Shown here: positions 1 to 32,331 of the stretch, one piece after another | Numbering within the stretch: position 1 is the first letter of the stretch | Layout: every line of letters begins with the position of its first letter | DNA from: Octopus bimaculoides | Taxonomy: Eukaryota | NCBI RefSeq assembly: GCF_001194135.2 | Contig: NC_068982.1 | Span: 142,588,334 to 142,620,891 of the forward strand | Reading direction: 5' to 3' | DNA length: 32,558 nt | Program-made: the position numbers and the translations under genes | The notes under the pieces: model-generated | Told to the model about the DNA's origin: nothing | Database searches by the model: none | What the model saw: the letters and a program-made list of their open reading frames with translations, nothing else

Positions 1-1330
1 GCCTCACGCAGCTCCTGCAGCATTATGACTGGGTTCTGAAGCAGCTACTTGACCATTCAAATGTTGATGTGATATATCTCAACTTTGCAAAAGCCTTTGA
101 CAAAGTTGATCATGGCTTGATATGTCACAAGCTGCGAAACCTTGGCATAACTAGTAAATTAGGAGAATGGCTGCATGACTTCTTGAATGGTAGAAGTCAG
201 GCAGTTGCAGCCAATGGAGAACTATCTAGGGAACACAAATATTGAGCGGTGTTCCGCAAGGAACTGTCCTGGGGCCACTACTGTTCATAGTGGCCCTTCT
301 GGACATGCCCACGGTCAATCGGAGAGCCACTGTCACTAGCTACGCCGATGACACAAAACTATCACAGGCAATAAAGAATCCTGATGATATTGTAAGCCTA
401 CAGAATGAACTAAATGCAATATATGAGTGGGCAGAGCAAAACAGTATGCAGTTCAATGCGGAAAAAATTCAAGTACTGCGCTACAAGGCCACAAGTGCCT
501 CCCAACTGGCATACACAGGACCTGGAGGTACTGCAATCCCAGAACCACAAGCCGTGAGAGGCCTGGGCATCAACATGTGTAGTGATGCATCATTTCACAT
601 GAACATTGTCAAGGTGACCGCAAAGTGCAGACAGCTGGCAGGGTCGATACTGAGGACATTCCGTACAAGGGATCAAAAAGTCATGCTTACTCTATGGAAG
701 ACATTTGTCCTGAGCCGCCTAGACTATTGCTCTCAGTCGTGGTCACCACACAGTGTTAAACGGACAGCAGATCTCGAGGCAATTCAGAGGCACTATACAA
801 AAAAGATCGCCACAGTCCAGCAGATGAACTACAGGGAGCAACTGCAGGCACTAGGTCTCTACCCCCTGGAACGCAGGAAAATATTGGAAGGACTGGTGCC
901 AAATTTTGGCATCAAGTACTACAGGAATTCCCGCACGGGTCGCCACTGCATAGTGCTAAAGGTGCCGTCCACTGCATCTCACATAAGAACAAGATACTGC
1001 AGCAGCCTCGGTTTCAGAGGACCTCAGCTCTTCAATGCCCTGCCAAAACATTTGAGACGTGCAAGACACGGATGTGGGGGTCTTCAGGACAAAACTCGAC
1101 TCTTTCCTCTCCACGATACCAGACGAACCAATGCCTAGAAATGAGACACAGTTTAGGGCAGCGATGTCAAATTCTCTTATACCCCAGATGTGCCATCAAA
1201 ACTCTTGATTGGACTATATCAGGTGCAGGAGAAGAGCCATGCAAGGAACGTGAAGAGAGCAAAGCATAAAGACAGAAAATCACGGTGGTGCTCCAGCATG
1301 ACCGCAACCACTTGGCTGAAACCCATAAAT
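1..1330 (+). mobile_element. CR1-group non-LTR retrotransposon (LINE): 3' part of the RT ORF plus 3' UTR, cut by the window start
   Basis: Frame from nt 3 reads VIYLNFAKAFDKVDHGLICHKLRNLG...WLHDFLNGRSQ, then shifts into ORF 242-1138 with SGVPQGTVLGPLLF, SYADDTKL, LVLSRLDYCSQSWSP and GPQLFNALP. The 3' tail GGTGCTCCAGCATGACCGCAACCACTTGGCTGAAAC lies at 1287-1322. Confidence 0.92.
3..1138 (+). pseudogene. Disrupted reverse transcriptase ORF of the CR1-group LINE
   Basis: Frameshift near nt 240. The RERYAIIYIW segment present in the 20.3-21.4 kb copy is missing here (LERRKILEG), and there is a further frameshift near the C-terminus. RT motifs YADD and PQG are retained. Confidence 0.85.
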
Positions 1331-3159
1331 ACGTAAATATATATATATATANNNNNNNNNNNNNNNNNNNNNNNNNNNNNNNNNNNNNNNNNNNNNNNNN
1401 NNNNNNNNNNNNNNNNNNNNNNNNNNNNNNNNNNNNNNNNNNNNNNNNNNNNNNNNNNNNNNNNNNNNNNNNNNNNNNNNNNNNNNNNNNNNNNNNNNNN
1501 NNNNNNNNNNNNNNNNNNNNNNNNNNNNNNNNNNNNNNNNNNNNNNNNNNNNNNNNNNNNNNNNNNNNNNNNNNNNNNNNNNNNNNNNNNNNNNNNNNNN
1601 NNNNNNNNNNNNNNNNNNNNNNNNNNNNNNNNNNNNNNNNNNNNNNNNNNNNNNNNNNNNNNNNNNNNNNNNNNNNNNNNNNNNNNNTATATATATATAT
1701 ATATATGTATATATATACATACATATATATTAAAGATAAATTTCCAAATTATGATTGGTAGAGATATAGAAGTGAGTACCGAAGTCGCATTTCCATAAAC
1801 ATACTTACGTTAACCTGATATTAAGCATTGATACTATCGCTCACCATTTAAGGATGGTCTATGTCAGTAGACTGCTAAAATTTCTGGGACAGCTAGTTAT
1901 TTTGTTTCTAACCAGTAGACTTGAAAACTTCCGGATCTAGGCTATTTTGGGAGCAATGTCATCACCACGTGTATTTCGGATGGACATGTATTTAATTTAG
2001 ATTCTATCTGAACAATGCGGTTAAATCCAACCCAAATATGCGGCAACTAACAATAAGTGCACATAAAGATGCAAATTTTGTAGAGTGCATTCGTTAAAAT
2101 GCTGCAGGAACATGTGTACGTGCAGACACGAAAAGAAGTAAGGGACTGTTGAATAAAACTCGATATAAATCTTTATTCTCCTATATTATAAATTTATCAT
2201 TCATATATATATATAGGAATAGTATGGAGGTATGTATGTATGTCTATTACGAACGTCTTTGCTGAAGCCTGCAACCAAAATACCGACGAAAAATTGTTAT
2301 AAGAACAAAGTGTTTTACACTGAATAACAGACGACCTCTTCTCATATTCAATGATCCTGAGAATGTATTCAGCAATTGTAATATAGCATAAATAGTAAAT
2401 AAATACATATTATTGACATGTCATGATATATCTCACCTTTTAATCACCCATGTAAATTTATATAAACATAGTGATATTCTGAGTGGGGTGTTTTAAATCA
2501 TAATATATTTATGAATGTTAGTACTAAACTGGATAACGCCATACTAGTTTCACTGAATTTTATGTGTTGAAATCAACGGTTTCTTACATACATGATTATA
2601 TGTTATCGCGGAAATGGTGAATTAAAAATTTATATTCACGTTTGTCGCAAAGGGGCGTAGCTAAATACGAGTAATGTGTCCGTTGTTTTATAGTTTCTTC
2701 GAATCCACGTGCTTATTAGAGCTTCAGGTACATAATTATTAATGGTATACTTTCTACAGTGAAACGCATTCTAACAACTAATGACTATTATAACGGAGAA
2801 TTATAAAGTATCGTATATATGTGAATGATTAATAACTGTTTACAAGTGTCAGTGTCCGGCTGAAGAATCTTTTAAAAGTTACGACATAGCATAATAGGAA
2901 TGAAAGAGTTTACCAAAACTTAAAACACTAAATTGGATCCAGGCTCTGAAATTAGAGAATATAGGAAACACACACCCTTAAATATCCTTTGTCATTGTTG
3001 AATCTTGTAAGGCAAAATAAGTAACCAAAGGCAAAATGTTGATATGAAGACATCAGAAACCTTGTGCTAAGGACTAAATTCAATACGATAAATACAATGC
3101 TAGGTATAACTAGAACAAGCCTCAAACTAGTTTTATGACTGACCTCAATATTAGATATA

Positions 3160-3547
3160 CAGGGTGCCACAAGGTCTGGGTACATAGAATAAATAAATTC
3201 ATAACATACACAATGAAATATAAGAAATAATAATTTCTTAAAGTATGTATTAATCCCCATGTGGGTACATGGAATAAATAAAATCGTAATATAAACAACT
3301 AAATATAAGAAATAATAATTTCTAATTTCTTAACGTATTTGTTAATCCCCATGTGGGTACATGGAGTGAATAAATTCATAGAATAAACAATTAAATATAA
3401 AAAATAATAATTTCTTAAAGTATGTGTTAATCTCCATGTGGGTACATGGAGTAAATAAAATCATAACATAAACAACTAAATATAAGAAATAGTGATTTCT
3501 TAAAGTATGTGTTAATCCCTATGTACCCAGACTTTGTGGACACCCTG
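3160..3547. mobile_element. Tc1/mariner-type MITE, 388 bp, with TA target-site duplication
   Basis: Left TIR CAGGGTGCCACAAGGTCTGGGTACATAG (3160-3187) versus reverse complement of the right TIR CAGGGTGTCCACAAAGTCTGGGTACATAG (3519-3547): one mismatch and one indel. Flanked by TA at 3158-3159 and 3548-3549. No coding capacity. Confidence 0.85.
3178..3520. repeat. Tandem array of four ~85-bp units inside the MITE
   Basis: Units begin with GGGTACAT at 3178, 3263, 3355 and 3440 (periods 85, 92, 85; the second unit carries a 7-nt TAATTTC duplication). Confidence 0.92.
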
Positions 3548-4284: not shown

Positions 4285-4498
4285 AAGGCGACGAGCTGGC
4301 AGAAATGTGAGCACACCGGGCGAAATGCTTACCAGTATTTCGTCTGTCTTTACGTTCTGAGTTCGAATTCCGCCGAGGTTGACTTTGCCTTTCATCCTTT
4401 CGGGGTCGATAAATTAAGTACCAGTTGTGTACTGGGGTCAATTTAATCGACTGGCCCCCTTCTCCAAAATTTCATGCCATGTGCCCAGAGTAGAGAAG
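4285..4498 (+). mobile_element. SINE family 1, full-length tRNA-derived SINE with a perfect 15-bp TSD
   Basis: Pol III B box GTTCGAATTCC at 4361-4371; core CTTTCATCCTTTCGGGGTCGATAAATTAAGTACCAG; TSD AATATGAGACAGAGA at 4270-4284 and 4499-4513. Confidence 0.92.
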
Positions 4499-5200
4499 AA
4501 TATGAGACAGAGAGATTACGCTAGGTATAAATACATAGTCATTCCTATATATTCAACATAAATTGAAAGTGAAGTAAAGAGTGTAGAGAGACAGTTAAAG
4601 AATATATTAAGAGCCGTTTGAATCTGCCTTCCAAAACCTGTATGAATAGCCCATATATGAGGGGCGGTGGGGACAATCTAATAAGGGTCCTTCTACTGCA
4701 ATACCTAATCTACTTCTCATCATACCCTGAAGCCGAAAAACAAAAATTGACCCATCCGATAATGTGATATTAGAATCTTCGTATAGGCCGACTGTTTTCG
4801 GCAAAAATTGCTTTGGTCATAGACTTGCTCAGTCAGGGTTGATCCATTCTCCAAAGCAATAACAACAAAGACAGCACGGTTTCATACAAAATACAATTAG
4901 GCTGACTAGAAAAAAAATTGAAAAACATAAGGTAAACGGAATCTAATTTCGGTCGATTATAGACCAAGAAGACTGGAATAAGCTTCGGATTAATGAGCTT
5001 GTAGATTCGTGACAAGACTATAAAAGCATATAGACATATATTTCATGTCATCGGTGTTTGTTTGTTTTTTATAAATTTGATTTATATTTAATCATTCGCT
5101 TTTCTTTCTAAACACACATAATCTATGTCTGCCTTCCTTAGTATTTGCCTTCGCATCTATCATCCTCCTGGCTAAAAGAAGAAAATATTATTGTTGTCAT

Positions 5201-5432
5201 AAGGGTAACAAGCAGGTAGAACAGTTACCGCGCCGGACAAAATGATTTTTTTTTTCTTCCACTGTTTTACATTTGTACATTTGGAGCTCAAATGCTGCGA
5301 GGTCGACTTTGCTTTTCATCCTTTCGGAGTTCTTAAGATCAACTATCTCCTACGTTAAAAGCCAAATATTGCGATCAATTATCCCTCACCATAAGCGCTG
5401 CAGAGTGTTTTGCTTAGATTAGAAACCATTAT
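5201..5432 (+). mobile_element. SINE family 1, degenerate copy
   Basis: Head CGCCGGACAAAATG, core GAGGTCGACTTTGCTTTTCATCCTTTCGGAG and tail AGAAACCATTAT align with the 4285 and 18673 copies. Confidence 0.7.
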
Positions 5433-6260: not shown

Positions 6261-7171
6261 ATGCAAATTCTTAAGATCGCAGCTGGATATTTCGGTTGTA
6301 AATTCCAAGAATATTACCGAGTGTAAATATGAAATGTTATTCTATTGTCGTTGTGAAATTGTTTTCCATTGCCTGCAAGAGTATTAAGAATATGTATGAC
6401 GTAATTTTCCTTAGTAGTATGGTGGCAGAGTGGTTAAGCTAATATATATTATATCATAGGTCAGAACGGAGGTTTCACAGACTCATTGTCAAAAACTTTT
6501 CAGGTCATTCTTCTTTGAATTTAAATATTCCGACTTTGCTTATATATATTAGGTGCCCTATATAGAGCTGCCGATAGTAACAGCATACATTTTACTCTAG
6601 GATTTCGGCCCTAGTATTTGTCTAAAAATTATAATATATGTTAAGCAGTGAGTCAGACTTCAAAATATCTTTGAATTCATCCTACATTACCAGGACTCAT
6701 CTTATTCTTGGCTCTCGATAACGGATCAACTTGGAATATTGTCGTTGTACGCTGCCATGCAGTAATAGAAAGCCTGTTAGAAAAAGCAGTCTGCCTTAAA
6801 GGAAAGAAACATTGGATGATGTGTTTTAGGGTGCATGTGGATTGAAATTTAAAAAAAAAAAGTGAGAGAGCATGTATCCCTGATAGTTCGGTGTTGGGAG
6901 AACTTATAGATAACTTCGAATTACGTGACTACCAACATAATTTAACCTATGCTCCGAAATCCCTACAGGTCACAAAAAGGTTTAGGCACGTATGATCGGT
7001 ACCACAATCCGCTCCTAACTATAATGTAGTTAGACAATCCTCAACATAATAGATAAGCTGGTAAGCGCATTATATAAAACATCACAGAAAACGCAATCGG
7101 CATTTTGCTGATAATGCGCCTAAGTGCTCGTTTAATTTGACGTGTAGATGGGAATGTAAGCTCATGTTTTC

Positions 7172-7310
7172 CTGCCGAGGTCAACATTACTTTTCATCCC
7201 TTCGGGGTCGATGAAATAAGTACCAGTTACGCAACGGGGTCAGTGTAATCGACTAGCCAGCACCCCTAAAATTTTAGGTCTAGTGCCATTAGCAGAAAGG
7301 ATTATTATTA
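7172..7310 (+). mobile_element. SINE family 1, 5'-truncated, with (ATT)n tail
   Basis: GCCGAGGTCAAC...TTTTCATCCCTTCGGGGTCGATGAAATAAGTACCAG...CCCCTAAAATTT...AGAAAGGATTATTATTA. Confidence 0.85.
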
Positions 7311-8435
7311 TAATTTTAATTAATATATGAAAAGTTACAGCATATTTTCCTGGGTATGACAGAAAGTGTCGGCTGTCCACAGTCAGCAGACTAAGGCGAC
7401 ACTTGTTTACTGATCATGATTCAAGAACGCAGTGAGGAATCTTTGCAATTCCAAACAATGCTGATTTTTGTATGTGTTCTACCTTTACACTTGCACCGAA
7501 CTTTTTCAGCCATGTTGGTAGTTGAATGCTGATATTTCCAAATGCACCAATTACTATTGGTACAATGACTGCTTTCTTCGTTGTCCACAACCTTCGTATG
7601 TCCTACTTTAATTCATCGTAGTTGTTTATTTCTTCTTTCACATTGATCCTGTTGTTACCACAACAACGTCCGGTTTCAGATGTCTGGTCGGGTGATCACA
7701 CTGAATCATTGCATCCCATCGGATTTTGAAATTTCATTTTCGGTTATTCCTCCTGGAGTTTTCTCATACCGGATATTTGCTCTTTGTAGGCCGTGGTTTC
7801 ATTTTAGCCATATTGTCAGGCTGTCGTTTGTATTATCGGTGTGCCAATTTCGAGCATTTGCCAACGATGTTTTACCCCTCTCACCACACATTCTGCATTT
7901 GTCGCTATCAGTAGTGTTGTCTATTCTGCACTTCATATAGCTGGTCTTTAACGCTTGTTCCTGAGTTGCGAATATGAGTTCTTCTTTCTCTATCTTCAAG
8001 TTGCTTCTCCTCATCAATAGCCACCAGTCGTCCTTAACTGTCTTGGCGTCACATCTCTTGCAAACTGACAGCATATCTTCTTTTCCTTCCATGCTGTTTT
8101 TTTTTTCCCGTTTTGTTTATTTTCGGTTTTGATGACACCGGCCTTCTTCGTGTGTTTCAAAAGTGGGTCCACGGCATTTTTTATATACCACCCTAAGCTG
8201 TTTTCCTCTGCTTCGATACAGTCCTGGCAATTGATCAAACCTTTCTTCTGGACAAGTTCAGCCTATCGGTGTGTCACGCTTAGGCTGGAAGGCGCCGTGT
8301 ACTGTCAACATTTTTCTTGTCTTGGTATCCATTTTCGTCATTTCTCTATGTTGTCATTTTGTAATTCCCGTTCCATACATAAGTGATGCTATCGCCCACG
8401 TATTAACTGCTTGGCTTTCATTCCATCCAGTCAAT
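7311..8435 (-). mobile_element. R4/Dong-like RLE-type non-LTR retrotransposon, 5'-truncated and decayed (copy 1)
   Basis: Minus-strand translation across frameshifts gives AVNTWAIASLMYG, MDTKTRKMLTVHGAFQPKRDTDRL, QEQALKTSYMKCRIDN, the zinc-knuckle start CRMCGERG, IQCDHPTRHLKPDVVV (PD of the restriction-like endonuclease) and VIVPIVIGAFG, followed by a short 3' UTR ending in TAATAATAA. Confidence 0.88.
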
Positions 8436-8543
8436 ACCATCACCATCATCGTCATCGTCATCATCATCATCATTATTATTATTATTATTATTGTTATTAT
8501 TATGATACAGGTATGTATGCCCATAAACACACACACACACACA

Positions 8544-9285: not shown

Positions 9286-9395
9286 ATATACATATATATA
9301 TATACATGCATACATACATACGTTCATACATACATACATGCATGCGTGCATGCATACGTACATACGTACATACGTACATACGTACATACGTACAT
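9286..9395. repeat. (TA)/(TACA)/(TACATACG)n microsatellite
   Basis: Read directly from the sequence. Confidence 0.9.
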
Positions 9396-10290: not shown

Positions 10291-10354
10291 CTGTGCCAAT
10301 TCTGGCAAAAACTTATCTAAATATTTAAGTATTTATATGTGTATATATGTGTGC

Positions 10355-10848
10355 ATTATCGTTGTGCCAATTTCAGGCATTTGCTAACGATGTTTTATCC
10401 CTCTCACCACACATTCTACGTTTGTCGCCATCGGTAGTATTGTCAATTCTACACTTCATATAATTGGTCCTTAACGCTTGTTCCTGAGCTGCGCAAATGA
10501 GTGCTTCTGTCTCTATCTTCAGGTCAATCCTCTTCGTCCATAGCCACTCGTCTTCTATATCCGTCTTGGCTTTCACATCTCTTGCAAACTGACTGTGCAT
10601 TTTTTCTTCTATGCTTTTCGTTTTTTTTTTGTTTTGTTTTTTTCTTTGGTTCATTTCTTTGTTAATTTTTTATTTAGTTACACAACTTTCAGTTTTGATG
10701 ACGCCGACCTTCATCGTGTGTTTCAACAATGGTTCAGCGGCACTTTTTATGTACCACCTCAGGTTGTTTTCCTCGATCTACAGCAATATTTGTATACCAC
10801 CCTAGGCTGTTTTCCTCGCTCCACGGCATTTTTTAATACCTCCTTAGG
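10355..10848 (-). mobile_element. R4/Dong-like LINE internal fragment (copy 2)
   Basis: MHSQFARDVKAKTDIEDEWLWTKRIDLKIETEALICAAQEQALRTNYMKCRIDNTTDGDKRRMCGERD (ORF 10373-10654). Aligns at DNA level with 7830-8215 and lacks the RLE domain and 3' end. Confidence 0.88.
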
Positions 10849-11033
10849 TCATCGTCAAAGTAAGAAACTAGCTAATCTTCAATCGGATCTGCTCGTTGGA
10901 ATCCAATGGGCAGAAAAAACACAATATACAGCTAAACACTTGTAAGTTTAAGTTAATCCACCTCAGTAAAGAGGCTGCAGCTAAACTACAATACGTTCTT
11001 CCCCCGGGAGAAAACCTCGTAACAACGGACTCC
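10846..11033 (+). repeat. Local 188-bp duplication of 9442-9628 (a piece of the CR1 fragment)
   Basis: Manual alignment shows 5 substitutions and 1 indel over 187/188 bp (~97% identity). Confidence 0.95.
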
Positions 11034-11045
11034 TCACTCCACGGC

Positions 11046-12030
11046 ATTATTATAATTACTCTTTCGTAGCACTGTGTAGGTAAAGATGCACCGGAGACTT
11101 TAGTCATCTGTCAAGACACAACAAGGACGTTAGAATATAATACTCAACTTAAGATGTGCGTTGTGCTCAATAAGGCTAATTTTAGCAAGCCATCTAACTT
11201 ACATGGGATTTCCAGTTGCCTTATGAAATCTTGAACTTTCGATGGGATTGAGCCGAACATTCCGATCACCACTGGTATCACTTTCACAATGCCCTCTCGC
11301 ATTCCGTACAGTCTTGCGATGTCTACTTTCATTTCGGAATACATTGTGATTTTCCCAGCTTCTTTACATGCATGTCATCTAACAGTATTTGTCTCTCTTA
11401 TTCAATATGACAATATCCGGCCGACGGTGTTCGATTACGCGATTTGAAAACCATAGTCCCAAAGTGTCATTACTTTTCCATCCTCCTGCATAACTTTACT
11501 TGCTACATGCTCATATCAGTGCTTTGTTACGTCATATTGGTACTTACATCATGAGAGCCAATTAAGATACCCACACACATTGTTGTAGCGGCGCTTGTAT
11601 TCTTTTTGTGCAAGGTTCTCACATCCACTTTCCAAGTGGGTCACATTTTCCACACTTTTTCCACAGAGTCTGCATTTCTAGGTGTCAGACGTTTTATAGA
11701 TGTTATACTTCAATGAATTGGTAGCAAGTGCCTGGTCTTGTGCAGCAATGATGAGGCTTTCGGTGGTACGCTTAAAATCACCTCATTCAGTCCATGTTCA
11801 CGATGCTGTATTATCCTTACCGTCCTCTGTATTCTTTTCAAACTGTCCATGTATTCTCATTTCAAGAAGGTCTTCTTTTTTCTTCTCCTCAACTCTTCCT
11901 TGCCCATTATTTCATCTTTATTTACACCCATATCTTTCGCGCGATATTGATTATTATTTTTTTTTAAATAAAATATGGTCCATTGCCTTCTTCTGAACCG
12001 GGGTCAGCTCTTGACCCTAGGATCACAGCA
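11046..12030 (-). mobile_element. R4/Dong-like LINE, 5'-truncated, distinct subfamily (copy 3)
   Basis: In-frame IHGQFEKNTE...ESLIIAAQDQALATN...KCRLCGKSVENVTHLESGCENLAQKEYKRRYNNV (CCHC knuckle), RRPDIVIL and VKVIPVVIGMFG...LALLSTTHILS*. The 3' UTR ends in TAATTATAATAAT. Confidence 0.9.
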
Positions 12031-12037
12031 GGACCTC

Positions 12038-12038
<1 letters not shown>

Positions 12039-12098
<60 letters not shown>
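12039..12098. repeat. (TTA)n microsatellite
   Basis: Read directly from the sequence; separates Dong-like copies 3 and 6. Confidence 0.97.
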
Positions 12099-12349
12099 GT
12101 TCAGTAGTTTTATTTTTATACTGTGCTTTTACTTCACTACCGAGCGCAGCTTTATGTGCCTTGGGTATGTGCTGTGGTTTGCTGTGATGCTCGTATGGTT
12201 ACTGTATTGAAAGTGGGTTGCGTAGGATGTGTGCAGTGCCCAGTAGTGCAATTTTCTGTATGTTATATATATTTGTAAGTCCTGGTGTTTTTGTTATGTA
12301 TTTGTCTGAAAATGTTTTATTATACGTAAGGCACCTACTATGATAGGAA

Positions 12350-12352
<3 letters not shown>
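12099..12352 (-). mobile_element. R4/Dong-like LINE, extreme 3' end, ~250 bp, third subfamily (copy 6), embedded in (TAA)n
   Basis: Minus strand TIPIIVGAL...DKYITKTPGLTNIYNIQKIALLGTAHILRNPLSIQ*, then a 3' UTR ending AAAACTACTGAAC(AAT)n. TTA arrays lie directly on both sides. Confidence 0.88.

Positions 12353-12388
<36 letters not shown>
12353..12388. repeat. (TTA)n microsatellite
   Basis: Read directly from the sequence. Confidence 0.97.
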
Positions 12389-14837: not shown

Positions 14838-15076
14838 TACATACATACATACATACATACATACATACATACATACATACATACATAGAAGCATACATAC
14901 CCAGTTGTTGATGGTGAAATTCCAATGAAGGAGCCTTGAATCTAGGTTAGAAACCGGCTCTTTCTCTATTGGCAAGAAATCTTGAAATGAAACTGAAAAT
15001 GACATACATACATACATACACACACACACATACATACATACATACATACATACATACATACATACATACATACATA
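14838..15076. repeat. Two (CATA)n tracts (14838-14885 and 15002-15076)
   Basis: Read directly from the sequence. Confidence 0.9.
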
Positions 15077-18672: not shown

Positions 18673-18880
18673 AAAAAGGCAGTGATAGAATCGTTAGTAC
18701 GCCGGAGAAAATGCTTAGCGGCATTTCGTCCTTCTTAACTCTGAGTTCAAATTCCGCTGATGCTGGCTTTGCTTTCCATCATTTCAAAGTCGATAAAATA
18801 GGTACCAGTTGTGTACTGGGATCGATGTAACTGACTTTCCCCCTCTCGCGAAATTGCTAGTCTTGTGCCAAAATTTGAAC
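18673..18880 (+). mobile_element. SINE family 1, near full length, with a 16-bp TSD
   Basis: B box GAGTTCAAATTCC and core GTCGATAAAATAGGTACCAGTTGTGTACTGGG. TSD TTAATATATT[A/G]ATTCA at 18657-18672 and 18881-18896 (one mismatch). Confidence 0.88.
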
Positions 18881-20306
18881 TTAATATATTGATTCAGTCT
18901 TATGTCAAAAGATGCGCACAGTGCTGAAATTGTTCTGTACAACTATTTTAAAGTTCAGGCATTGTACACACAAGAGTTATAAAAGTGTTGCTTAATGTAA
19001 CACGAACCCGTCTGTTATTTGTTTCCATCGGCTACATTGCCGGGAGCCTTCCCTTGACTGGGAAGTGCTGGCAGTTTTTCTATGTCCTGTGGCCATGGCG
19101 AAAATATTTGTTTTCTTGTTAAATTGAAACGGATAAAATTTTTCTCTATTCGTCCAAGCTAAATAAAAAATCGTGTGTGTTGGAGATGTAGGTTAGAGGT
19201 TGTTGAGAACGTTGTAGATTAGAGCAGGCGTGGATAGAAGGGGCGGTTATATGTATGAGATGACTTTCTTAGTTGCAGATAAATCTTTCGGTTGGAGACA
19301 AAGGTGTAGGTTAGAGAAGGTGTTGATTGGTGAAGATGTGCATAAGAGAGGAAGATGTGTGTCACAAAAGTAGGTGTGTGTTGAGGAGGATCGTATGAGA
19401 TAGAAAAAAAGGTAGTGCCTGCCACTAGATTTAATACATATTAGATAAGAGAGATGGGAACGGTCTGAGTGGGTAGGGCAATTGGTATCATGGAAATGTA
19501 GGCGAGGTTGTAAGCTGCAAGAGTACTGTTGCTCTTGTTTATGAGGTCAATCTGAACATATGGGCTCCCTTCATTGTAAACATGTGCCTCTTCACTCTTT
19601 GGGAAGTATCATTTTATTTGCTTTTTTTATTACTGTATAGCTTTTGTTAATTTTCACAATCGATTCTGCGTAAAAGCTGTTTATTGTGAGTTGCAGTTTT
19701 AATGTTCCCCTCAGCTCCTACCCTTGTGGCAAATTATAAAAAAACATTATTCATAGTAATGATGATGATGTTGACGGGGGTTGTTGCTGTTGAAGATGGT
19801 GGTGGTTGTGATGTTGGTAATGAGGAATGTGATGATGATAATATCATCGGTGTTGTTGTATTTGCGGTTAAGAAAAAAAGACTCACAGATGTGTTTTTGA
19901 GCCGAACTAAATTTCCTACGTCATATAATTATGTGGCTTTACATTTTAACTCAAATTTCAATAGGAAATTCTTTGCCTTTCATTTCAGATGAAAACCTAA
20001 ATAAATACCTCCAGTATACAGCTGTGGATTCTATCGATAATAGCTATTTCATAAATTGCGAAACGATTAGGAATCGATGTAGCATAATTATTAGGGAATA
20101 GTGGATGAAGAATCGCTATGATGATCAAAAAGAACATCATCCAGCAGTTTATTCCGGCTTTTTGTAGCGTGAGTTCAATTCTCAATGAAGTAAACTCTTA
20201 CTTTCATTTTTCTAGTATTTGATGGAATATCGTCAAATAGTTTAGTCGATCAAACCGAATCTTTGTATTTTTCTATTTATATTAGACTTGATTTTTATTT
20301 TCTAAT

Positions 20307-21400
20307 TTTATTTTATCTAGTTTCTGCTCACGAGCTGTGGTCATGCTGGGGCACTGCCATTTGAGGTTGCTACATTATTTTACTTCACGAATACTTTTTA
20401 GGAATTGACATTTAGTGCACGAGAGAGCTTGATGCAGCTGCCCTCATCTGCATTTCCTGCTACGAAGTTGGTTCATCTGGGACACTTGACTGTAAGAGGT
20501 CCAGATTTATTTTGAAGACACCTACATCCGCACCATGCAGGTCTCTCAGGTCCTTCGGGATGATATTGAAGAACTCTGACGCCCAGGCTATTGCAGTATC
20601 TTATCCTACATCTTCATGGCAAATATGGAGTCCTTGGCACTATACAGTGGCGCCCAATTCTTGTATTTGTGTAACTCGCAATGCCAAAGTTTGGGACAAG
20701 TCCTTCCAGATGTATATTATGGCGTATCTTTCTCGCCTACGCTCTAAGGAATAGAGTCTTAATCTCTTGAATCTTTCCAAATAGCTTATATGCTGCATAG
20801 AGGCTATCTTCGTGTAGCTTCGTTGGATTGTCTCAAGTTCTGGGATTAATTTCACACTGGTTGGTGACCATAGCTGCGAGCAATGCTCAAAGTGGCTTAG
20901 GACAAGTGTCCTCCAGAGGACCATCATGGTTTTCTGTTCTCTTGTTGTAAAAGTTCTAAGAATCAATCCGGCCAGCCGCCTGCATTTTATTGCCAATTTA
21001 GCAACATGTACGTGAAAGGATGCATCATTACTCATGTAAATATCCAGGTCTCGCTCTGACTGTGCCTCTGGGATTGCAAACCCTCCATTTCCAGTGTATT
21101 TAATGGGTATTGCATTTAGTTTTGCATGCTATTCTTTTCAGCCCACTTTTATATTTCATCCAGCTCACATTGCAGGTGCATCGTGTCTTCAGGGTTATGT
21201 ACTACCTATGAGACTTTTGTATCATCTGCATAACTTGTGATCGTGCCTCTCAGTGGCTTGAGTAACACCGCTCACTATTTGCGTGTTATTGGCGGTGGAT
21301 CCATTGGCTACTACCACCTAATTTCTATCCTTCAGAAGGTTATGAAGCCATTCTCCCAATTTTCCAACAATGCCGATGTCACGCAGCTTGAGACAGATCA
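20307..21400 (-). mobile_element. CR1-group LINE, 5'-truncated, same family as 1-1330
   Basis: Minus strand VICLKLRDIGIVGKLGEWLHNLL, SYADDTK, ILRTFTTREQKTMMVLWRTLVLSHFEHCSQLWSP and LERRRERYAIIYIWK. About 56 bp (equivalent to 267-322, LGPLLF...) is deleted. The tail GTGCCCCAGCATGACCACAGCTCGTGAGCAGAAAC lies at ~20320-20354. Confidence 0.92.
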
Positions 21401-25139: not shown

Positions 25140-25294
25140 TCTGAAGGAGCTGTCCCCACAATTTTTTTCAACTATTCCAAATATAGTTCTTTACAACAAT
25201 ATGGTTAATATTATTACGTAAATTGAGACATTTGGTCCTATTATAAGAGGTCAATATAATTACTATCTTATTAATCATCAAATCACTTATTATT

Positions 25295-25378
25295 GTTGCA
25301 CTGTGGTCAATATAAAGCAGTAGCGCTTCCCCTAAAATTCCAAGGCTTGTACTTATACCAGAAAAAATTATTATTATC
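25295..25378 (+). mobile_element. SINE family 1, 3' fragment with (ATT)n tail
   Basis: CTGTGGTCAATATAA...CCCCTAAAATTCCAAGGCTTGTACTTATACCAGAAAAAATTATTATTAT aligns with 7240-7310. Confidence 0.65.
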
Positions 25379-25389
25379 ATTTTGGTTGG

Positions 25390-25830
25390 GTTGTGGTAAC
25401 CTCAGGCATTCGCTAACAGTTTGCCATGCAGTTTCTCCACTTGCACTGCACGTTCTGTATTCATCGCTCTCATTTGTATTTTCAATTCTGCATTTCACAT
25501 GGTTAGTCCTTGACGCTTGTTCTTGTGCTGCGCATATAGGCGCTCCTGTCTCTATCTTCAGATCACTCCTCCTCATTCATAGCCACCGGTCTTCGTACAT
25601 CTTGCAAACTCACCATACATGTTTTCTTTCCGTGCTCGTTCTTTTTTTCTTAGTTCTTTCCTTTTTAAGACTTCTTTCTTTACAGAATTATCAGTTTTGA
25701 TGATGCCGGTTTCCTTCACATGCTTTAACAATGGTTTCCACATGTTTCCACGGCATTTTTTACATACCACATTAAGCCGTTCTCCTCTGCTTCTACACAA
25801 TCCTGACAACTGATCGTACCTCTCCCAGCT
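25390..25830 (-). mobile_element. R4/Dong-like LINE internal fragment (copy 4)
   Basis: MRRSDLKIETGAPICAAQEQASRTNHVKCRIENTNESDEYRTCSASGETAWQTVSECLRLPQ and PLLKHVKETGIIKT...MYGEFAR. Aligns with copies 1 and 2. Confidence 0.85.
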
Positions 25831-26592
25831 TTTCTTCTTCATAAGTACAAAGTATCAGTGTCAGTCTTGGGATGGAATGTTCCATGCGCTCTCAATATTT
25901 TGCATGCCACATAATGATAGAATTTATACAAAAAATACAGCATTTTACTTTGCTTTCTTTCGTTATTGTCACTGACGATCTTATCTGACACCTCTGATTC
26001 AACATTATGAGAACTCCATAACGTTTTTTTTTTATTTATATTTATCCTTATTGGTGTCGTTTCTATTGCTGTCATTATTGTAAATAATGTTGTTGCTATT
26101 CCTATTATTATTATTGCTGACGTTGAAGCTATTAACGATTTAATAAGTTTAACATAAATACAGTTATTAGTAACACAAGTATTATTACTAGTATTGCAAC
26201 TATTACTAGTACTGCTGCCTCTTTTAATATGGACTTTAATATACAATGAAGACAATGTTTCTTTATGGCATTTAATAATAGAAAAATTAGCTATACATAG
26301 GCAAACAATGCCAAACGGTATGATCAAATTGTGTAAAAGAAATATTTTGTATTCGAATCAAAACGAGTAAAAGAATTACAAAAGCAAAATATCTGAGACT
26401 GCAGTAATTCAACACACAGATAAGATCTATTAATTATGGAGTACATCGCTAGCCAAAACTCAATGGAAGAATGTTATATGGCGTCTGAGGCGTTAATGAA
26501 GCTAAGGTAGTTATTTACTCATATATANNNNNNNNNNNNNNNNNNNNNNNNNNNNNNNNNNNNNNNNNNNNNNNNNNNNNNNNNNNNNNNNN

Positions 26593-28883: not shown

Positions 28884-28917
<34 letters not shown>

Positions 28918-29220
28918 GTAATAATTGTTAGCATTATAATTATAACAATAATAAGATAAGATGATGATGATCAGTAATATTGAGAAACACCGGGATTAGT
29001 ATAGAAGGACACATGAAGGAGAGATCAACACCTGGAGAGTGGTACAAATGTAAAAGATTAGAGCACCTACAAAAATCATCTTCAGACCGCAAAAGATTTC
29101 TGGAATTTTTTTGTTAAACTTGATCAATAAACAAGAGTTACTCTAGTCTACTCGCTGTGGATGGCTGACATGTTCTATCATACCCAGCATAAAACGATGA
29201 GATTTTTCATTAAATAATGA

Positions 29221-29440
29221 TAATAATAATGATTTCAAATTAGGCACAAAACCAACAATTTTGGGGAGGGAATAAATCGATTACATCGATTCTAGTACTC
29301 AGCTGGTATTTATTTTATCGACCCCGAAAGGATGACAGGCAAAGTGGACCTCAGCGGAATTTGAACTAAAAACGTAAAAGACAGACGAAATACAACTAAT
29401 CATTTTTTCCAGCGTGCTAACGGGTCTGTGAGCTCACCTT
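29221..29440 (-). mobile_element. SINE family 1, full length, inserted in a TAA tract
   Basis: Reverse complement reads AAGGTGAGCTC...AGTTCAAATTCCGCTGAGGTCCACTTTGCCTGTCATCCTTTCGGGGTCGATAAAATAAATACCAG...TTTGAAATCATTATTATTA. TAA repeats lie on both sides. Confidence 0.88.
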
Positions 29441-29443
29441 ATG

Positions 29444-29478
<35 letters not shown>

Positions 29479-29479
<1 letters not shown>

Positions 29480-29805
29480 TAGCAAGGATTATCCAGTGAA
29501 CACTTTGCAGAAAGTACGAACTTGACAGAGCAAAAAAGTGGTACGAACTTAAACCGGAAGGCATCATCGAAAATGATAATGCAAAGATCCTATGGAATTT
29601 AATGATTCAGTGCGACCATGAGATAGAGAATAGGAAACCAGACATAGTGTTACTTGAGAAAGAAAGCAAACGATGCTGGATCATAGATATAGCATGCCCA
29701 GCTGACAACAATGTGTGCGATCAGGAAGAAAGAAAAGTCGATAAATATGACAGGTTAGCTTGGGAGGTTAAGTAGTTGTGGACGATGAAAAAGGTCGTAG
29801 TAGTA
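29479..29805 (+). mobile_element. R4/Dong-like LINE, RLE-domain fragment (copy 5)
   Basis: One frame reads IARIIQ*TLCRKYELDRAKKWYELKPEGIIENDNAKILWNLMIQCDHEIENRKPDIVLLEKESKRCWIIDIACPADNNV...KYDRLAWEVK*LWTMKKVVVV, a clear PD-D restriction-like endonuclease. It starts directly after (TAA)n at 29441-29478. Confidence 0.92.
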
Positions 29806-30806
29806 TGACATACATCGAAGATTGCCGTGGACTATGTCACTCGACGTATTAGATATAGGAGCCAACTCAATTTGAGATCATGACCCGTCGTCATAAGTAA
29901 CCGAATGAAATCTTACACATAATAGGACAGCATAGTTATATCTGGAAATTCTTTGATATTACTTACTTCAATGGAATTAGGAAAACTTGGAGTGAAGCAA
30001 CAACAAATTTTACAAGTACATCTAACTGTATGCTTCTGATTTGTTTATCAACAGTTTCAATTATATTACAAAATTTCAAAAGCAAATGTTAACACTTAAA
30101 TCCTGTTACTAAATCCACTATAACTTATATCCTATATCTCAGTTATCTTCAATGATACATTAGTCTTAAATGTGATATTGTAGATATTGTATCAGTTATT
30201 CGAAATATTTCTATGAAGACTTTACTGACTAATTGTATAAATACATTTGTCGATCAATTTCTTGTTCTTATGTTCTTTAACAATAACTTACATTGTGTAT
30301 TCGTGTATTGTGTACACACACGGGTTTAGACATATATCCATAATTATAGACGCACATAGACACACAAAGACACCGACACACACCCATAGATATACACCAT
30401 TGTGCTTACAACACACTCAAAGAGATAGTGTCTTACATACATATTGAATATGTGCAACGAGATATTCATCTTAGTATAGTAAACTTCAGCTAAAAACTCA
30501 GAGAGATAAGAAAAATTCTTATTGCCTAGTATTATAGACATTGATATATAAAAAAAATGCCTAACAGTATATTACACATATGAAAACAACAATATTAGGT
30601 TGCGACTATATTAAAATAACTCTGCTTATTCTGTATATCTAATATTCTTGGATAAATACTATGTGTTTCCAAAAAAATGGCGCCTTTAAGCAGATTTGAT
30701 TCAGAGGCGGAGGTAAATGGAGCGAATATTCCCTGTATTAACATGTTGTTGTTGTTGCTGCTGCTGCTGATGTTGTTGTTGTTGTTGTTAGTATCATTTA
30801 TTCCAC

Positions 30807-31015
30807 AAGGCGACAGAATCCTTAATATGCTGGACAAAATGCTTAGCAGCATTTCGAACGCCTTCTTCTTCTGAGATCAAATTCCGCCGAAGTTGACTTC
30901 GCTTTTCATTTTTTCGTGGCAAATAAAATAAGTATCGGTTGAGCCCTGTGGTCGATGTAATCGACTTACACTCTACTTCAAAACTGTTGATCAAAGAGTG
31001 GCTAAATCTAAAACG
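30807..31015 (+). mobile_element. SINE family 1, degenerate copy
   Basis: AAGGCGACAGAATC...GGACAAAATGCTTAGCAGCATTTCG...GAGATCAAATTCCGCCGAAGTTGACTTCGCTTTTCAT...GGTCGATGTAATCGACT. Confidence 0.8.
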
Positions 31016-31525
31016 AGTAGTAGTAGTAGTAGTTGTTGCTGTTGTTGTTGTTGATAGTGGTGGTGGTGATGGCGTTCCTCTATATACAAGTGCGCATGCG
31101 TTTTGAATATATATATAAACCAACATACAGTGTAGCCGTAATCGAGTAAGATGAATTTTCGGTCATGCGGATAAATAACGGTAGAATAATTTTCAAAATC
31201 TTCGCGTTCGTGTTCAAATGTTTGATCGCCTAAGCAAGGGTAAAATACGGGATTGAAAAGATTCACTCGCTTTTCATAATGATCTGCTGGTTAATGTGAG
31301 GAAACCATCAGAAAAGAAACATCTTCAAAATATGGTTTTAGGTAATGAAGAGCCTTGCGGATTATCATAGTTGAAAGAACTTCGGCATAAACGTAACCAG
31401 TTAGGGTTACGCTAGGATATTGAACAGCAATTGATTCCAAGTTATATATTATACGTCCAGATATAACAACTGTGCAGCGAGTGACAGAATTTAGAATATG
31501 GACTTCGACTAGCAGGTCATGCTAC

Positions 31526-31892: not shown

Positions 31893-32331
31893 TATATGCA
31901 ATAATCTACATATGGATAATTCTAGAAGGGCTACTACCTAACTTCGGCATTGAGTGTTATACAAATGCCAGAACTGGTCGCCATTGTAGTGTACCAAAGC
32001 TACCATCAATTCTATCTATATTCAGGACCTGTTACTGCAATGGTCTTCAATACCATGCCACAAAAATTAACAAATCCACAAAAAGGTAGATGTAGATGAG
32101 TTCAAAAAGGAACTAGACATTCTCCTCTCCACAATACCGGATGGACCAACAGAGTGACATGAGGTGCAGACGAGGGCAACAAATCAAATTCCCTTACATA
32201 CCAAATAGACCAACAGCTAGAAGTAAGGCACGTACAGGAGTGGTGATGTGAAACATCCCAATCTGAGGCTGTCAAAAAAACCACGGTGATGCTGCAGCAT
32301 GACCGCAACTGAAAGGAGTAAAAGAATAAAA
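31893..32331 (+). mobile_element. CR1-group LINE, 3'-terminal fragment, same family as 1-1330
   Basis: YAIIYIWIILEGLLPNFGIECYTNARTGRHCSVPKLPS aligns with 880-1000 and 20640-20740. The tail CACGGTGATGCTGCAGCATGACCGCAACTGAAAGGAGTAAAAGAATAAAA lies at 32282-32331. Confidence 0.88.

What the first reader, a model, noticed from the sequence alone, without database searches (positions are those of the whole stretch)
7172..7420. SINE (ATT)n tails appear to act as landing pads for TAA-targeting R4/Dong LINEs (tail-to-tail pairs)
Seen: at 7172-7310 a plus-strand SINE ends in GGATTATTATTA and is followed immediately by the 3' end of a minus-strand Dong-like LINE, whose own strand ends in TAATAATAA. The same arrangement recurs at 25295-25378 and 25390-25830. 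At 29221-29805 a SINE and a Dong-like fragment share one TAA tract head-to-head. Established: Dong-type R4-clade elements are reported to insert into (TAA)n microsatellites. Inference: a prolific SINE disperses the microsatellite target that a sequence-specific LINE needs, a one-way facilitation between unrelated retroelements that I do not know to be described for this group.
Basis: partly seen in the sequence, partly recalled or inferred. Interest (0 to 1): 0.7.

Follow-up and report, generated by a model that had tools for sequence, protein, structure and literature searches.

The report
SINE and Dong-like LINE share TAA tracts
In this octopod genome window a short retroelement (SINE) and a TAA-repeat-seeking LINE really do sit tail-to-tail far more often than chance allows. 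But the ATT "tail" is target-site sequence, not something the SINE carries, so the SINE has not been shown to supply landing pads for the LINE.

Summary
At 7170-7437 a 5'-truncated plus-strand SINE is followed by 12-14 nt of ATT repeat, then the 3' UTR of a minus-strand, 5'-truncated LINE.

This LINE has a restriction-like endonuclease (RLE), a TAA tail and TAA flanks, so it is Dong-like. The arrangement recurs at 25294-25960. Three convergent pairs give P about 5e-7 under random placement.

- **No ATT tail on clean copies.** The SINE copies with clean 15-16 bp target-site duplications (4285-4497, 18673-18880) have none.
- **The ATT "tail" of the full-length SINE at 29231-29440 is a duplication.** It is a perfect 14-bp target-site duplication (ATTATTATTATCAT, found at both ends), so this SINE entered a TAA tract that already existed.
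- **The 14-mer marks SINE flanks.** Its only three exact copies in the window are SINE flanks.
- **The LINE does not need SINEs.** It forms tandem arrays through its own TAA tails (10349-12388).

Only the 7170 copy hints at SINE-first nesting, through a 12/15 candidate duplication (p 0.01-0.03).

The best reading is that both families home to the same short TAA/ATT runs with opposite strand polarity. The order of arrival is unresolved. No further DNA from the source species was reachable, so no genome-wide test was possible.

The parts
7170..7300 (+). SINE copy E, 5'-truncated (3' 130 nt of the family)
   Evidence: It is 71-74% identical to copies A and B.
7301..7314 (.). Junction 14-mer ATTATTATTATAAT. 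On the LINE strand it reads ATTATAATAATAAT, the LINE's own irregular terminus.
   Evidence: The terminus AATTATAATAAT is shared with the SINE-free LINE copy g at 11048-11060.
7313..8437 (-). Dong-like LINE copy a, 5'-truncated and decayed. The 3' UTR is 7313-7413, the stop codon is 7414-7416, and the CCHC and RLE remnants lie upstream.
   Evidence: The composite translation is 38% identical to P0001 over 98% of its length.
8438..8506 (.). (CAT)12(ATT)10 compound tract flanking the 5' end of LINE a
7151..7165 (+). Candidate left target-site duplication of SINE E, GGAATGTAAGCTCAT. Its partner GGTATGTATGCCCAT lies at 8510-8524.
   Evidence: 12 of 15 positions match, at the same offset from both boundaries. 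Shuffle p is 0.011 and the genomic null gives p 0.032.
25294..25366 (+). SINE copy F, heavily 5'-truncated, with TTATTATT immediately upstream
25367..25380 (+). Exact 14-mer ATTATTATTATCAT at the SINE F / LINE c junction
25381..25960 (-). Dong-like LINE copy c, 5'- and 3'-truncated. It ends at an internal GATAAT, as copy b does.
28884..28971 (.). (AAT)n tract followed by (GAT)4, the 5' flank of LINE d
28972..29216 (+). Dong-like LINE copy d: the last ~48 codons, a stop at 29115-29117 and the 3' UTR
   Evidence: It is 69% identical to copy a over 197 nt, E 3e-15.
29217..29230 (-). 3' copy of the SINE A target-site duplication (ATTATTATTATCAT on the SINE strand). This is also the start of the LINE d tail.
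29231..29440 (-). SINE copy A, full length (head AAGGTGAGC..., end ...AATTTGAAATC)
29441..29479 (.). 5' copy of the SINE A target-site duplication (29441-29454), continuing as (ATA)12 up to the 5' end of LINE e
29479..29805 (+). Dong-like LINE copy e, holding the RLE motif region (RKPDIV...IIDIA...KVDKY)
   Evidence: It is 51% identical to P0001 residues 357-465. The motif aligns to the R2 protein 9nl2_A.
10349..12388 (-). SINE-free tandem array of three 5'-truncated Dong-like copies joined by TAA tails: f (12099-12348), g (11061-12039) and b (10349-11047). Flanking tracts are at 12349-12388, 12040-12098 and 11048-11060.
4285..4497 (+). SINE copy B, full length. Its target-site duplication is AATATGAGACAGAGA and it has no ATT tail.
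18673..18880 (+). SINE copy C, full length. Its target-site duplication is TTAATATATT(A/G)ATTCA and it has no ATT tail.

Best explanation
Two unrelated retroelement families converge on the same short TAA/ATT runs, with opposite strand polarity. That convergence makes antisense, tail-to-tail pairs.

**Shown.**
- The LINE is an RLE-type, TAA-tailed, Dong-like element.
- Each copy with a readable 5' end has a TAA-type tract upstream. Only about 10-14 nt of TAA separates its 3' UTR from the next non-repeat sequence.
- It also stacks into head-to-tail arrays through its own tails.
- The SINE makes 14-16 bp target-site duplications that begin ATTAT, AATAT or TTAAT.
- At copy A the duplication is the TAA run itself.

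**Inferred.**
- The LINE integrates by target-primed reverse transcription, in which the cut target DNA primes copying of the element's RNA. The primer is the (ATT)n strand.
- The SINE is moved by another, probably AP-endonuclease-type, LINE that nicks AT-rich sites.
- A TAA run read on its ATT strand is then an array of good SINE sites. This fixes the SINE's orientation opposite to the LINE.
- The "(ATT)n tail" of the SINE is therefore mostly duplicated target or LINE tail, not cargo.
- Dong-like 3' termini are one abundant source of such runs.
- At 29217-29454 the SINE most simply entered the tail of LINE d in a d-to-e array.

The order at the other two pairs is unresolved. Facilitation may run in either direction.
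For: - **LINE identity.** The C-terminal CCHC plus PD..D..K region aligns to the R2 protein 9nl2_A, E 8e-7. A relative, L001, ends in about 250 nt of (TAA)n. The window copies end in TAA runs.
- **TAA flanks.** Copies a, d, e, f and g have TAA-type tracts at their 5' ends. Five of the seven tracts of 20 nt or more touch a Dong-like fragment.
- **SINE-free arrays.** These are seen in f-g-b and in another genome, L003.
- **SINE A duplication.** SINE A is flanked by a perfect 14-bp direct repeat that includes a G interruption. The exact 14-mer occurs only three times in the window, each time as a SINE flank. One- and two-mismatch variants flank SINE E (3' side) and SINE G (5' side).
- **No tail on clean copies.** B, C and H have no ATT tail.
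- **ATT upstream of SINE 5' boundaries.** Two of eight SINE 5' boundaries have an ATT 8-mer within 16 nt upstream. The background is 0.6-0.9% of positions.
- **Non-random pairing.** P is 5e-7.
Against: - SINE E has no ATT at its 5' flank. It has instead a 12/15 candidate duplication that encloses the SINE, LINE a and the (CAT)n(ATT)n tract (p 0.011-0.032). If real, that tract belonged to the SINE and the LINE came second.
- In all three pairs the SINE body lies 12-14 nt from LINE unique sequence. Both elements therefore used nearly the same bond. Independent homing does not fully explain this.
- The sample is one 32-kb window with 8 SINE and 7 LINE fragments.
- All copies are old (65-78% pairwise identity), so ages cannot be ranked.
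- The SINE's partner LINE was not identified.
Confidence: 0.55

Rival explanations
1. The SINE arrives first and carries or grows an (ATT)n tail. The Dong-like LINE then nicks that tail and primes from it. SINE spread thus multiplies LINE targets, a one-way facilitation.
For: - The geometry fits target-primed reverse transcription from the ATT strand.
- For SINE E, a 12/15 candidate duplication encloses the SINE, the LINE and the tract.
- LINE g likewise leaves only 13 nt of TAA before the next non-repeat sequence, the 5' end of copy b. The LINE may therefore always insert about 13 nt from the downstream edge of a tract, with the SINE body acting as that edge.
- LINE c ends at an internal AUGAUAAU that is complementary to the SINE-flank primer ...ATTATCAT.
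Against: - Copies B, C and H have no ATT tail.
- The ATT stretch after SINE A is a target-site duplication of a pre-existing tract.
- SINE F has ATT on its 5' side too.
- No SINE in the window has an unoccupied ATT tail.
- Copy b is cut at the same internal site as c without any SINE.
- The LINE thrives in SINE-free TAA tracts.
Confidence: 0.2
2. This is reverse facilitation. The canonical 3' terminus of the Dong-like LINE (...A(T/G)ATAATAATAAT) is itself the preferred landing site of the SINE. LINE spread thus seeds SINE targets.
For: - The SINE A duplication copies exactly the 14 nt that follow the LINE d 3' UTR.
- The junction sequence at E/a contains the irregular AATTATAAT terminus shared with the SINE-free copy g, so that part is LINE-encoded.
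- In A and G the duplication ends in CAT at the SINE head. The same CAT lies where the tails of LINE c and LINE d begin.
Against: - SINE E shows no matching 5' duplication.
- SINE G has the 14-mer-like flank with no LINE nearby.
- The SINE A result is equally compatible with a generic compound (ATT)n(ATC)n microsatellite hit by both elements.
Confidence: 0.18
3. The SINE is mobilised by the Dong-like enzyme itself, priming from the opposite strand of the same staggered cut.
For: - Both elements use nearly the same bond in all three pairs.
- (AUU)n and (UAA)n are complementary.
Against: - B and C have 15-16 bp duplications at non-microsatellite AT-rich sites. That is typical of AP-endonuclease LINEs and not of R2-type insertion.
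- No sequence is shared between the SINE 3' region and the LINE 3' UTR.
- Worked through on paper, twin priming on one cut gives head-to-head pairs, not tail-to-tail ones.
Confidence: 0.04
4. The pairs are chance juxtaposition or a mis-assembly at microsatellites in a gapped draft assembly.
For: The window holds 2,344 N, mostly next to simple repeats.
Against: There are three independent, mutually diverged junctions with the same fine structure, and P is 5e-7 under random placement.
Confidence: 0.03

Closest known systems
Dong (Bombyx mori) and DongAg/DongBg: R4-clade, TAA-microsatellite-specific non-LTR retrotransposons (PMC3812793 and PMC2887409, citing Xiong & Eickbush 1993 and Kojima & Fujiwara 2004). 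"Dong-R4" families are annotated in octopus genomes (PMC9115989, PMC13282606, PMC8967140).
   Same: - An endonuclease of the restriction-enzyme-like type lies C-terminal to the reverse transcriptase.
- The 3' tail is (TAA)n.
- Copies sit inside TAA tracts.
- Copies are 5'-truncated and form head-to-tail arrays.
   Different: - Clade placement by reverse-transcriptase phylogeny was not done, because the window copies lack the RT domain.
- Two copies end at an internal GATAAT.
- (GAT)n runs sit at two of the 5' junctions.
Retroelement tails as sources of microsatellites: Alu and L1 poly(A) tails (PMC3812793) and RTE 3' ends that create SSRs including (ATT)n (PMC2887409)
   Same: A simple repeat sits at the 3' end of a retroelement and becomes part of the local microsatellite landscape.
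   Different: Here the ATT run beside the SINE is, where it can be tested, duplicated target rather than element-borne tail. The papers found and read here do not link such tails to a microsatellite-specific LINE.
Octopus tRNA-derived SINEs: OK/OR1/OR2 (Ohshima & Okada 1994, cited in PMC4824008) and the tRNA-Core and tRNA-Deu families (PMC8967140)
   Same: - The element is about 210 nt long and highly repeated.
- It has a B-box-like GAGTTCRAATTCCGC motif.
- It has a conserved core, CCTTTCGGGGTCGATAAAATAAGTACCAG.
- It makes 14-16 bp target-site duplications.
   Different: The family was not identified by name, because no reference sequence was at hand. Rfam and ARAGORN do not recognise the head as a tRNA.

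Membership tests
R4/Dong-type non-LTR retrotransposon | Restriction-enzyme-like endonuclease (CCHC knuckle plus PD..D..K) C-terminal to the reverse transcriptase | tested here: met
   P0001 residues 318-474 align to the R2 protein 9nl2_A residues 934-1068. Window copy e keeps RKPDIV...IIDIA...KVDKY, and copies a, b, c and g keep C(R)xCG.
R4/Dong-type non-LTR retrotransposon | 3' end made of (TAA)n | tested here: met
   Copies a, d, f and g end in TAA runs of 9-59 nt. The relatives L001 and L003 end in (TAA)n.
R4/Dong-type non-LTR retrotransposon | Insertion inside (TAA)n microsatellites, with a tract on both sides | tested here: met
   The 5' flanks of a, d, e, f and g are TAA-type tracts.
R4/Dong-type non-LTR retrotransposon | Reverse-transcriptase domain groups with Dong/R4 rather than with R2, NeSL, Hero or CRE | not tested
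   The window copies are 5'-truncated and lack the RT domain. No named Dong or R4 reference sequence could be fetched. Related octopod RLE-type LINEs in Argonauta (L002) end in (ACAT)n instead, so tail specificity varies within the group.
tRNA-derived SINE | Internal Pol III promoter / tRNA-like head | tested here: inconclusive
   A B-box-like GAGTTCRAATTCCGC motif is present in copies A-D. ARAGORN finds no tRNA. Rfam finds no tRNA match at E up to 10 on copy B.
tRNA-derived SINE | Short, non-coding, dispersed copies bounded by target-site duplications | tested here: met
   There are eight copies or fragments. The duplications are 15 nt (B), 16 nt (C) and 14 nt (A).
   In B and C the body is followed directly by the duplication, and H also lacks ATT. 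In A the ATT stretch is the duplication itself. E is a possible exception.

The most novel reading that the evidence does not exclude
The SINE is itself a target-selective element that homes to the motif (ATT)3ATCAT. In this genome that motif is supplied largely by the 3' termini of Dong-like LINEs. Both would cut nearly the same bond, which would build self-extending TAA-tract nests.
Probability: 0.2. Interest if true: 0.55.

Novelty: new member of a known kind. Interest (0 to 1): 0.35.

Why it matters
SINEs make up about 12% of octopus genomes, and Dong-R4 LINEs are among the recently active families (PMC13282606).

If two unrelated retroelement families systematically share short TAA runs, three things would follow:
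- Those tracts would be predictable nests of repeated insertion.
- They would be a source of compound microsatellites.
- They would confound repeat annotation and age estimates, because what looks like a tail would really be target sequence.

The papers read here treat tail-borne repeats and repeat-specific LINEs separately.

Tried and rejected
- **Getting more DNA of the source species.**
  - The SINE-core pattern found nothing in viral or metagenome contigs.
  - The intact 298-aa ORF of the window is not on record.
  - The three protein searches returned no Octopus-genus protein; the only octopod hit was Argonauta hians. The closest named relative of the window's other LINE is from Argonauta hians, at 55% identity.
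  - So no genome-wide enrichment or age test could be run.
- **Argonauta locus L002.** It holds RLE-type LINEs, but they end in (ACAT)n, and its SINE-like piece has no ATT tail. It is not informative for this pair.
- **Pfam.** It has no model for the LINE C-terminal region.
- **Rfam and ARAGORN.** They gave only microsatellite noise and no tRNA for the SINE head.
- **A shared 3' region.** I looked for one between the SINE and any LINE in the window, either the Dong-like 3' UTRs or the CR1-like family ending ...CAGCATGACCGCAAC. None was found.
- **Target-site duplications enclosing F+c and A+d.** The matches were low-complexity only.
- **Twin priming of two RNAs on one staggered cut.** Worked through on paper, it gives head-to-head pairs, not tail-to-tail ones.
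- **LINE 3' transduction of flanking SINE sequence.** This was rejected because the SINE-distal ends carry no TAA run.

Full report
**Setting**

The window is AT-rich (33% G+C) draft sequence with 2,344 N and many microsatellites.
- Its intact 298-aa reverse-transcriptase ORF (242-1138) has its best named relative in Argonauta hians, at 55% identity. The source is therefore an octopod, but the species could not be named.
- Published work reports that octopus genomes are about 12% SINE. It also reports abundant, partly recent "Dong-R4" LINEs (PMC13282606, PMC8967140, PMC9115989).

**The two elements**

*The SINE.*
- Eight copies or fragments are present. A, B, C and D are full length (about 210 nt). 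E, F and H are 5'-truncated. G is a 5' part only.
- They share a B-box-like GAGTTCRAATTCCGC motif and the core CCTTTCGGGGTCGATAAAATAAGTACCAG.
- ARAGORN and Rfam do not call the head a tRNA.

*The LINE.*
- Seven fragments are present: a, b, c, d, e, f and g.
- A composite translation of copy a finds P0001 at 38% identity.
- The C-terminus of P0001 aligns to the zinc knuckle and restriction-like endonuclease of a solved R2 protein, 9nl2_A, E 8e-7.
- The copy that encodes P0001 ends in about 250 nt of (TAA)n.
- In the window, copies a, d, f and g end in TAA runs. Copies a, d, e, f and g have TAA-type tracts at their 5' ends.
- Together with the literature on Dong (PMC3812793, PMC2887409), this supports "Dong-like, TAA-targeting". 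Clade phylogeny was not possible.

**The observation**

- The pair at 25294-25960 is real, but LINE c stops at an internal GATAAT about 560 nt short of the canonical end. Copy b does the same with no SINE beside it.
- Immediately to its left lies a third tail-to-tail pair, LINE d with SINE A.
- Three convergent pairs within 20 nt have P about 5e-7 under random placement.

**Does the SINE bring the tract?**

Mostly not, as far as this window can tell.
- Copies B and C have clean 15- and 16-bp target-site duplications directly after the SINE body, with no ATT tail. Copy H also has none.
- Copy D lies in a (GTT)n tract.
- The key result concerns SINE A (29231-29440). It is bounded by a perfect 14-bp direct repeat, ATTATTATTATCAT on its own strand, at 29217-29230 and 29441-29454. 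The repeat includes a G/C interruption of the TAA repeat.
- Joining the two flanks gives an uninterrupted TAA tract running from the 3' UTR of LINE d to the 5' end of LINE e. That is the same kind of head-to-tail array as f-g-b and as in another genome, L003.
- So SINE A entered a tract that already existed. Its ATT "tail" is duplicated target.
- The exact 14-mer occurs only three times in the window, always as a SINE flank. The third copy follows SINE F. Near-copies follow SINE E and precede SINE G.
- SINE F also has TTATTATT at its 5' boundary. An ATT 8-mer within 16 nt upstream is seen at 2 of 8 SINE 5' boundaries, against 0.6-0.9% of positions.

- For SINE E there is no ATT on the 5' side. 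A 12/15 match lies at the same offset from both boundaries: GGAATGTAAGCTCAT at 7151-7165 and GGTATGTATGCCCAT at 8510-8524 (shuffle p 0.011, genomic p 0.032). It encloses the SINE, LINE a and the (CAT)n(ATT)n tract.
- If real, the tract belonged to that SINE and the LINE came second.
- LINE g leaves only 13 nt of TAA before the next non-repeat sequence. The LINE may therefore insert at a fixed short distance from a tract's downstream edge. That would explain the 12-14 nt spacing under the SINE-first order.

**What remains unexplained**

- In all three pairs the SINE body is 12-14 nt from LINE unique sequence, so both elements used nearly the same bond.
- Part of that stretch at E/a is the irregular terminus AATTATAAT, which is shared with the SINE-free copy g and is therefore LINE-encoded.
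- Either order can be made to fit. The window cannot rank ages, because all copies are 65-78% identical to each other.

**Conclusion**

- The pairing is real and is driven by TAA/ATT runs and by strand polarity.
- The Dong-like LINE does not depend on SINEs (array f-g-b). Five of the seven long TAA tracts touch a LINE fragment.
- The premise that a prolific SINE disperses the LINE's target is contradicted by most copies and weakly favoured by one.
- The best reading is shared homing to the same short runs. LINE tails are a likely source of SINE sites at one or more junctions.
- A genome-wide test is needed. It could not be run because no further DNA of the species was reachable.

Noticed in passing
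window 10349-12388: Three 5'-truncated Dong-like copies (f, g, b) lie head-to-tail on the minus strand, joined only by TAA runs of 59 and 13 nt. The same kind of array occurs in an unrelated genome at L003 11740-12700.
   Followed up: partly
window 10349-10360 and 25381-25400: LINE copies b and c both stop at the same internal GATAAT, about 560 nt upstream of the canonical 3' end. This points either to a subfamily with a new 3' end or to internal priming on a TAA-like site.
   Followed up: partly
window 8438-8471 and 28955-28971: Runs of (GAT)n on the LINE strand sit between the long (AAT)n tract and the 5' ends of LINE a and LINE d. In both cases the LINE therefore lies at a GAT-to-AAT transition of a compound microsatellite.
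   Followed up: no
window 30744-31053: SINE copy D (30807-31006) is flanked by (GTT)n-type repeats on both sides and is followed by (AGT)5. This is another SINE sitting in a trinucleotide tract.
   Followed up: no
window 5187-5330: SINE fragment G (5' part only) is preceded by ATTATTGTTGTCAT. This is a two-mismatch variant of the 14-mer that flanks SINE A and SINE F, and no LINE is nearby.
   Followed up: partly
L002 7620-7690 and 15370-15410 (Argonauta hians): Two RLE-type LINE copies related to the window's LINE end in (ACAT)n rather than (TAA)n. This suggests different microsatellite specificities within octopod RLE-type LINEs. The window is also rich in (ACAT)n tracts, for example 9294-9395 and 14838-15076.
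   Followed up: partly
L001 2400-2450: The 5' end of a TAA-tailed Dong-like copy abuts the poly(A)/TAA end of a different LINE. This is another retroelement tail used as an insertion site.
   Followed up: no
window 242-1340, 20300-21035 (-), 31900-32310: A second LINE family has an intact 298-aa RT C-terminal ORF at 242-1138. Its copies share the 3' end ...GGTG(G/A)TGCTSCAGCATGACCGCAAC and it is unrelated to the SINE 3' region.
   Followed up: partly
window 3177-3524: An 85-bp tandem repeat is present in four copies at 83% identity. Its nature is unknown, and at least three of the units contain AATAATAAT.
   Followed up: no
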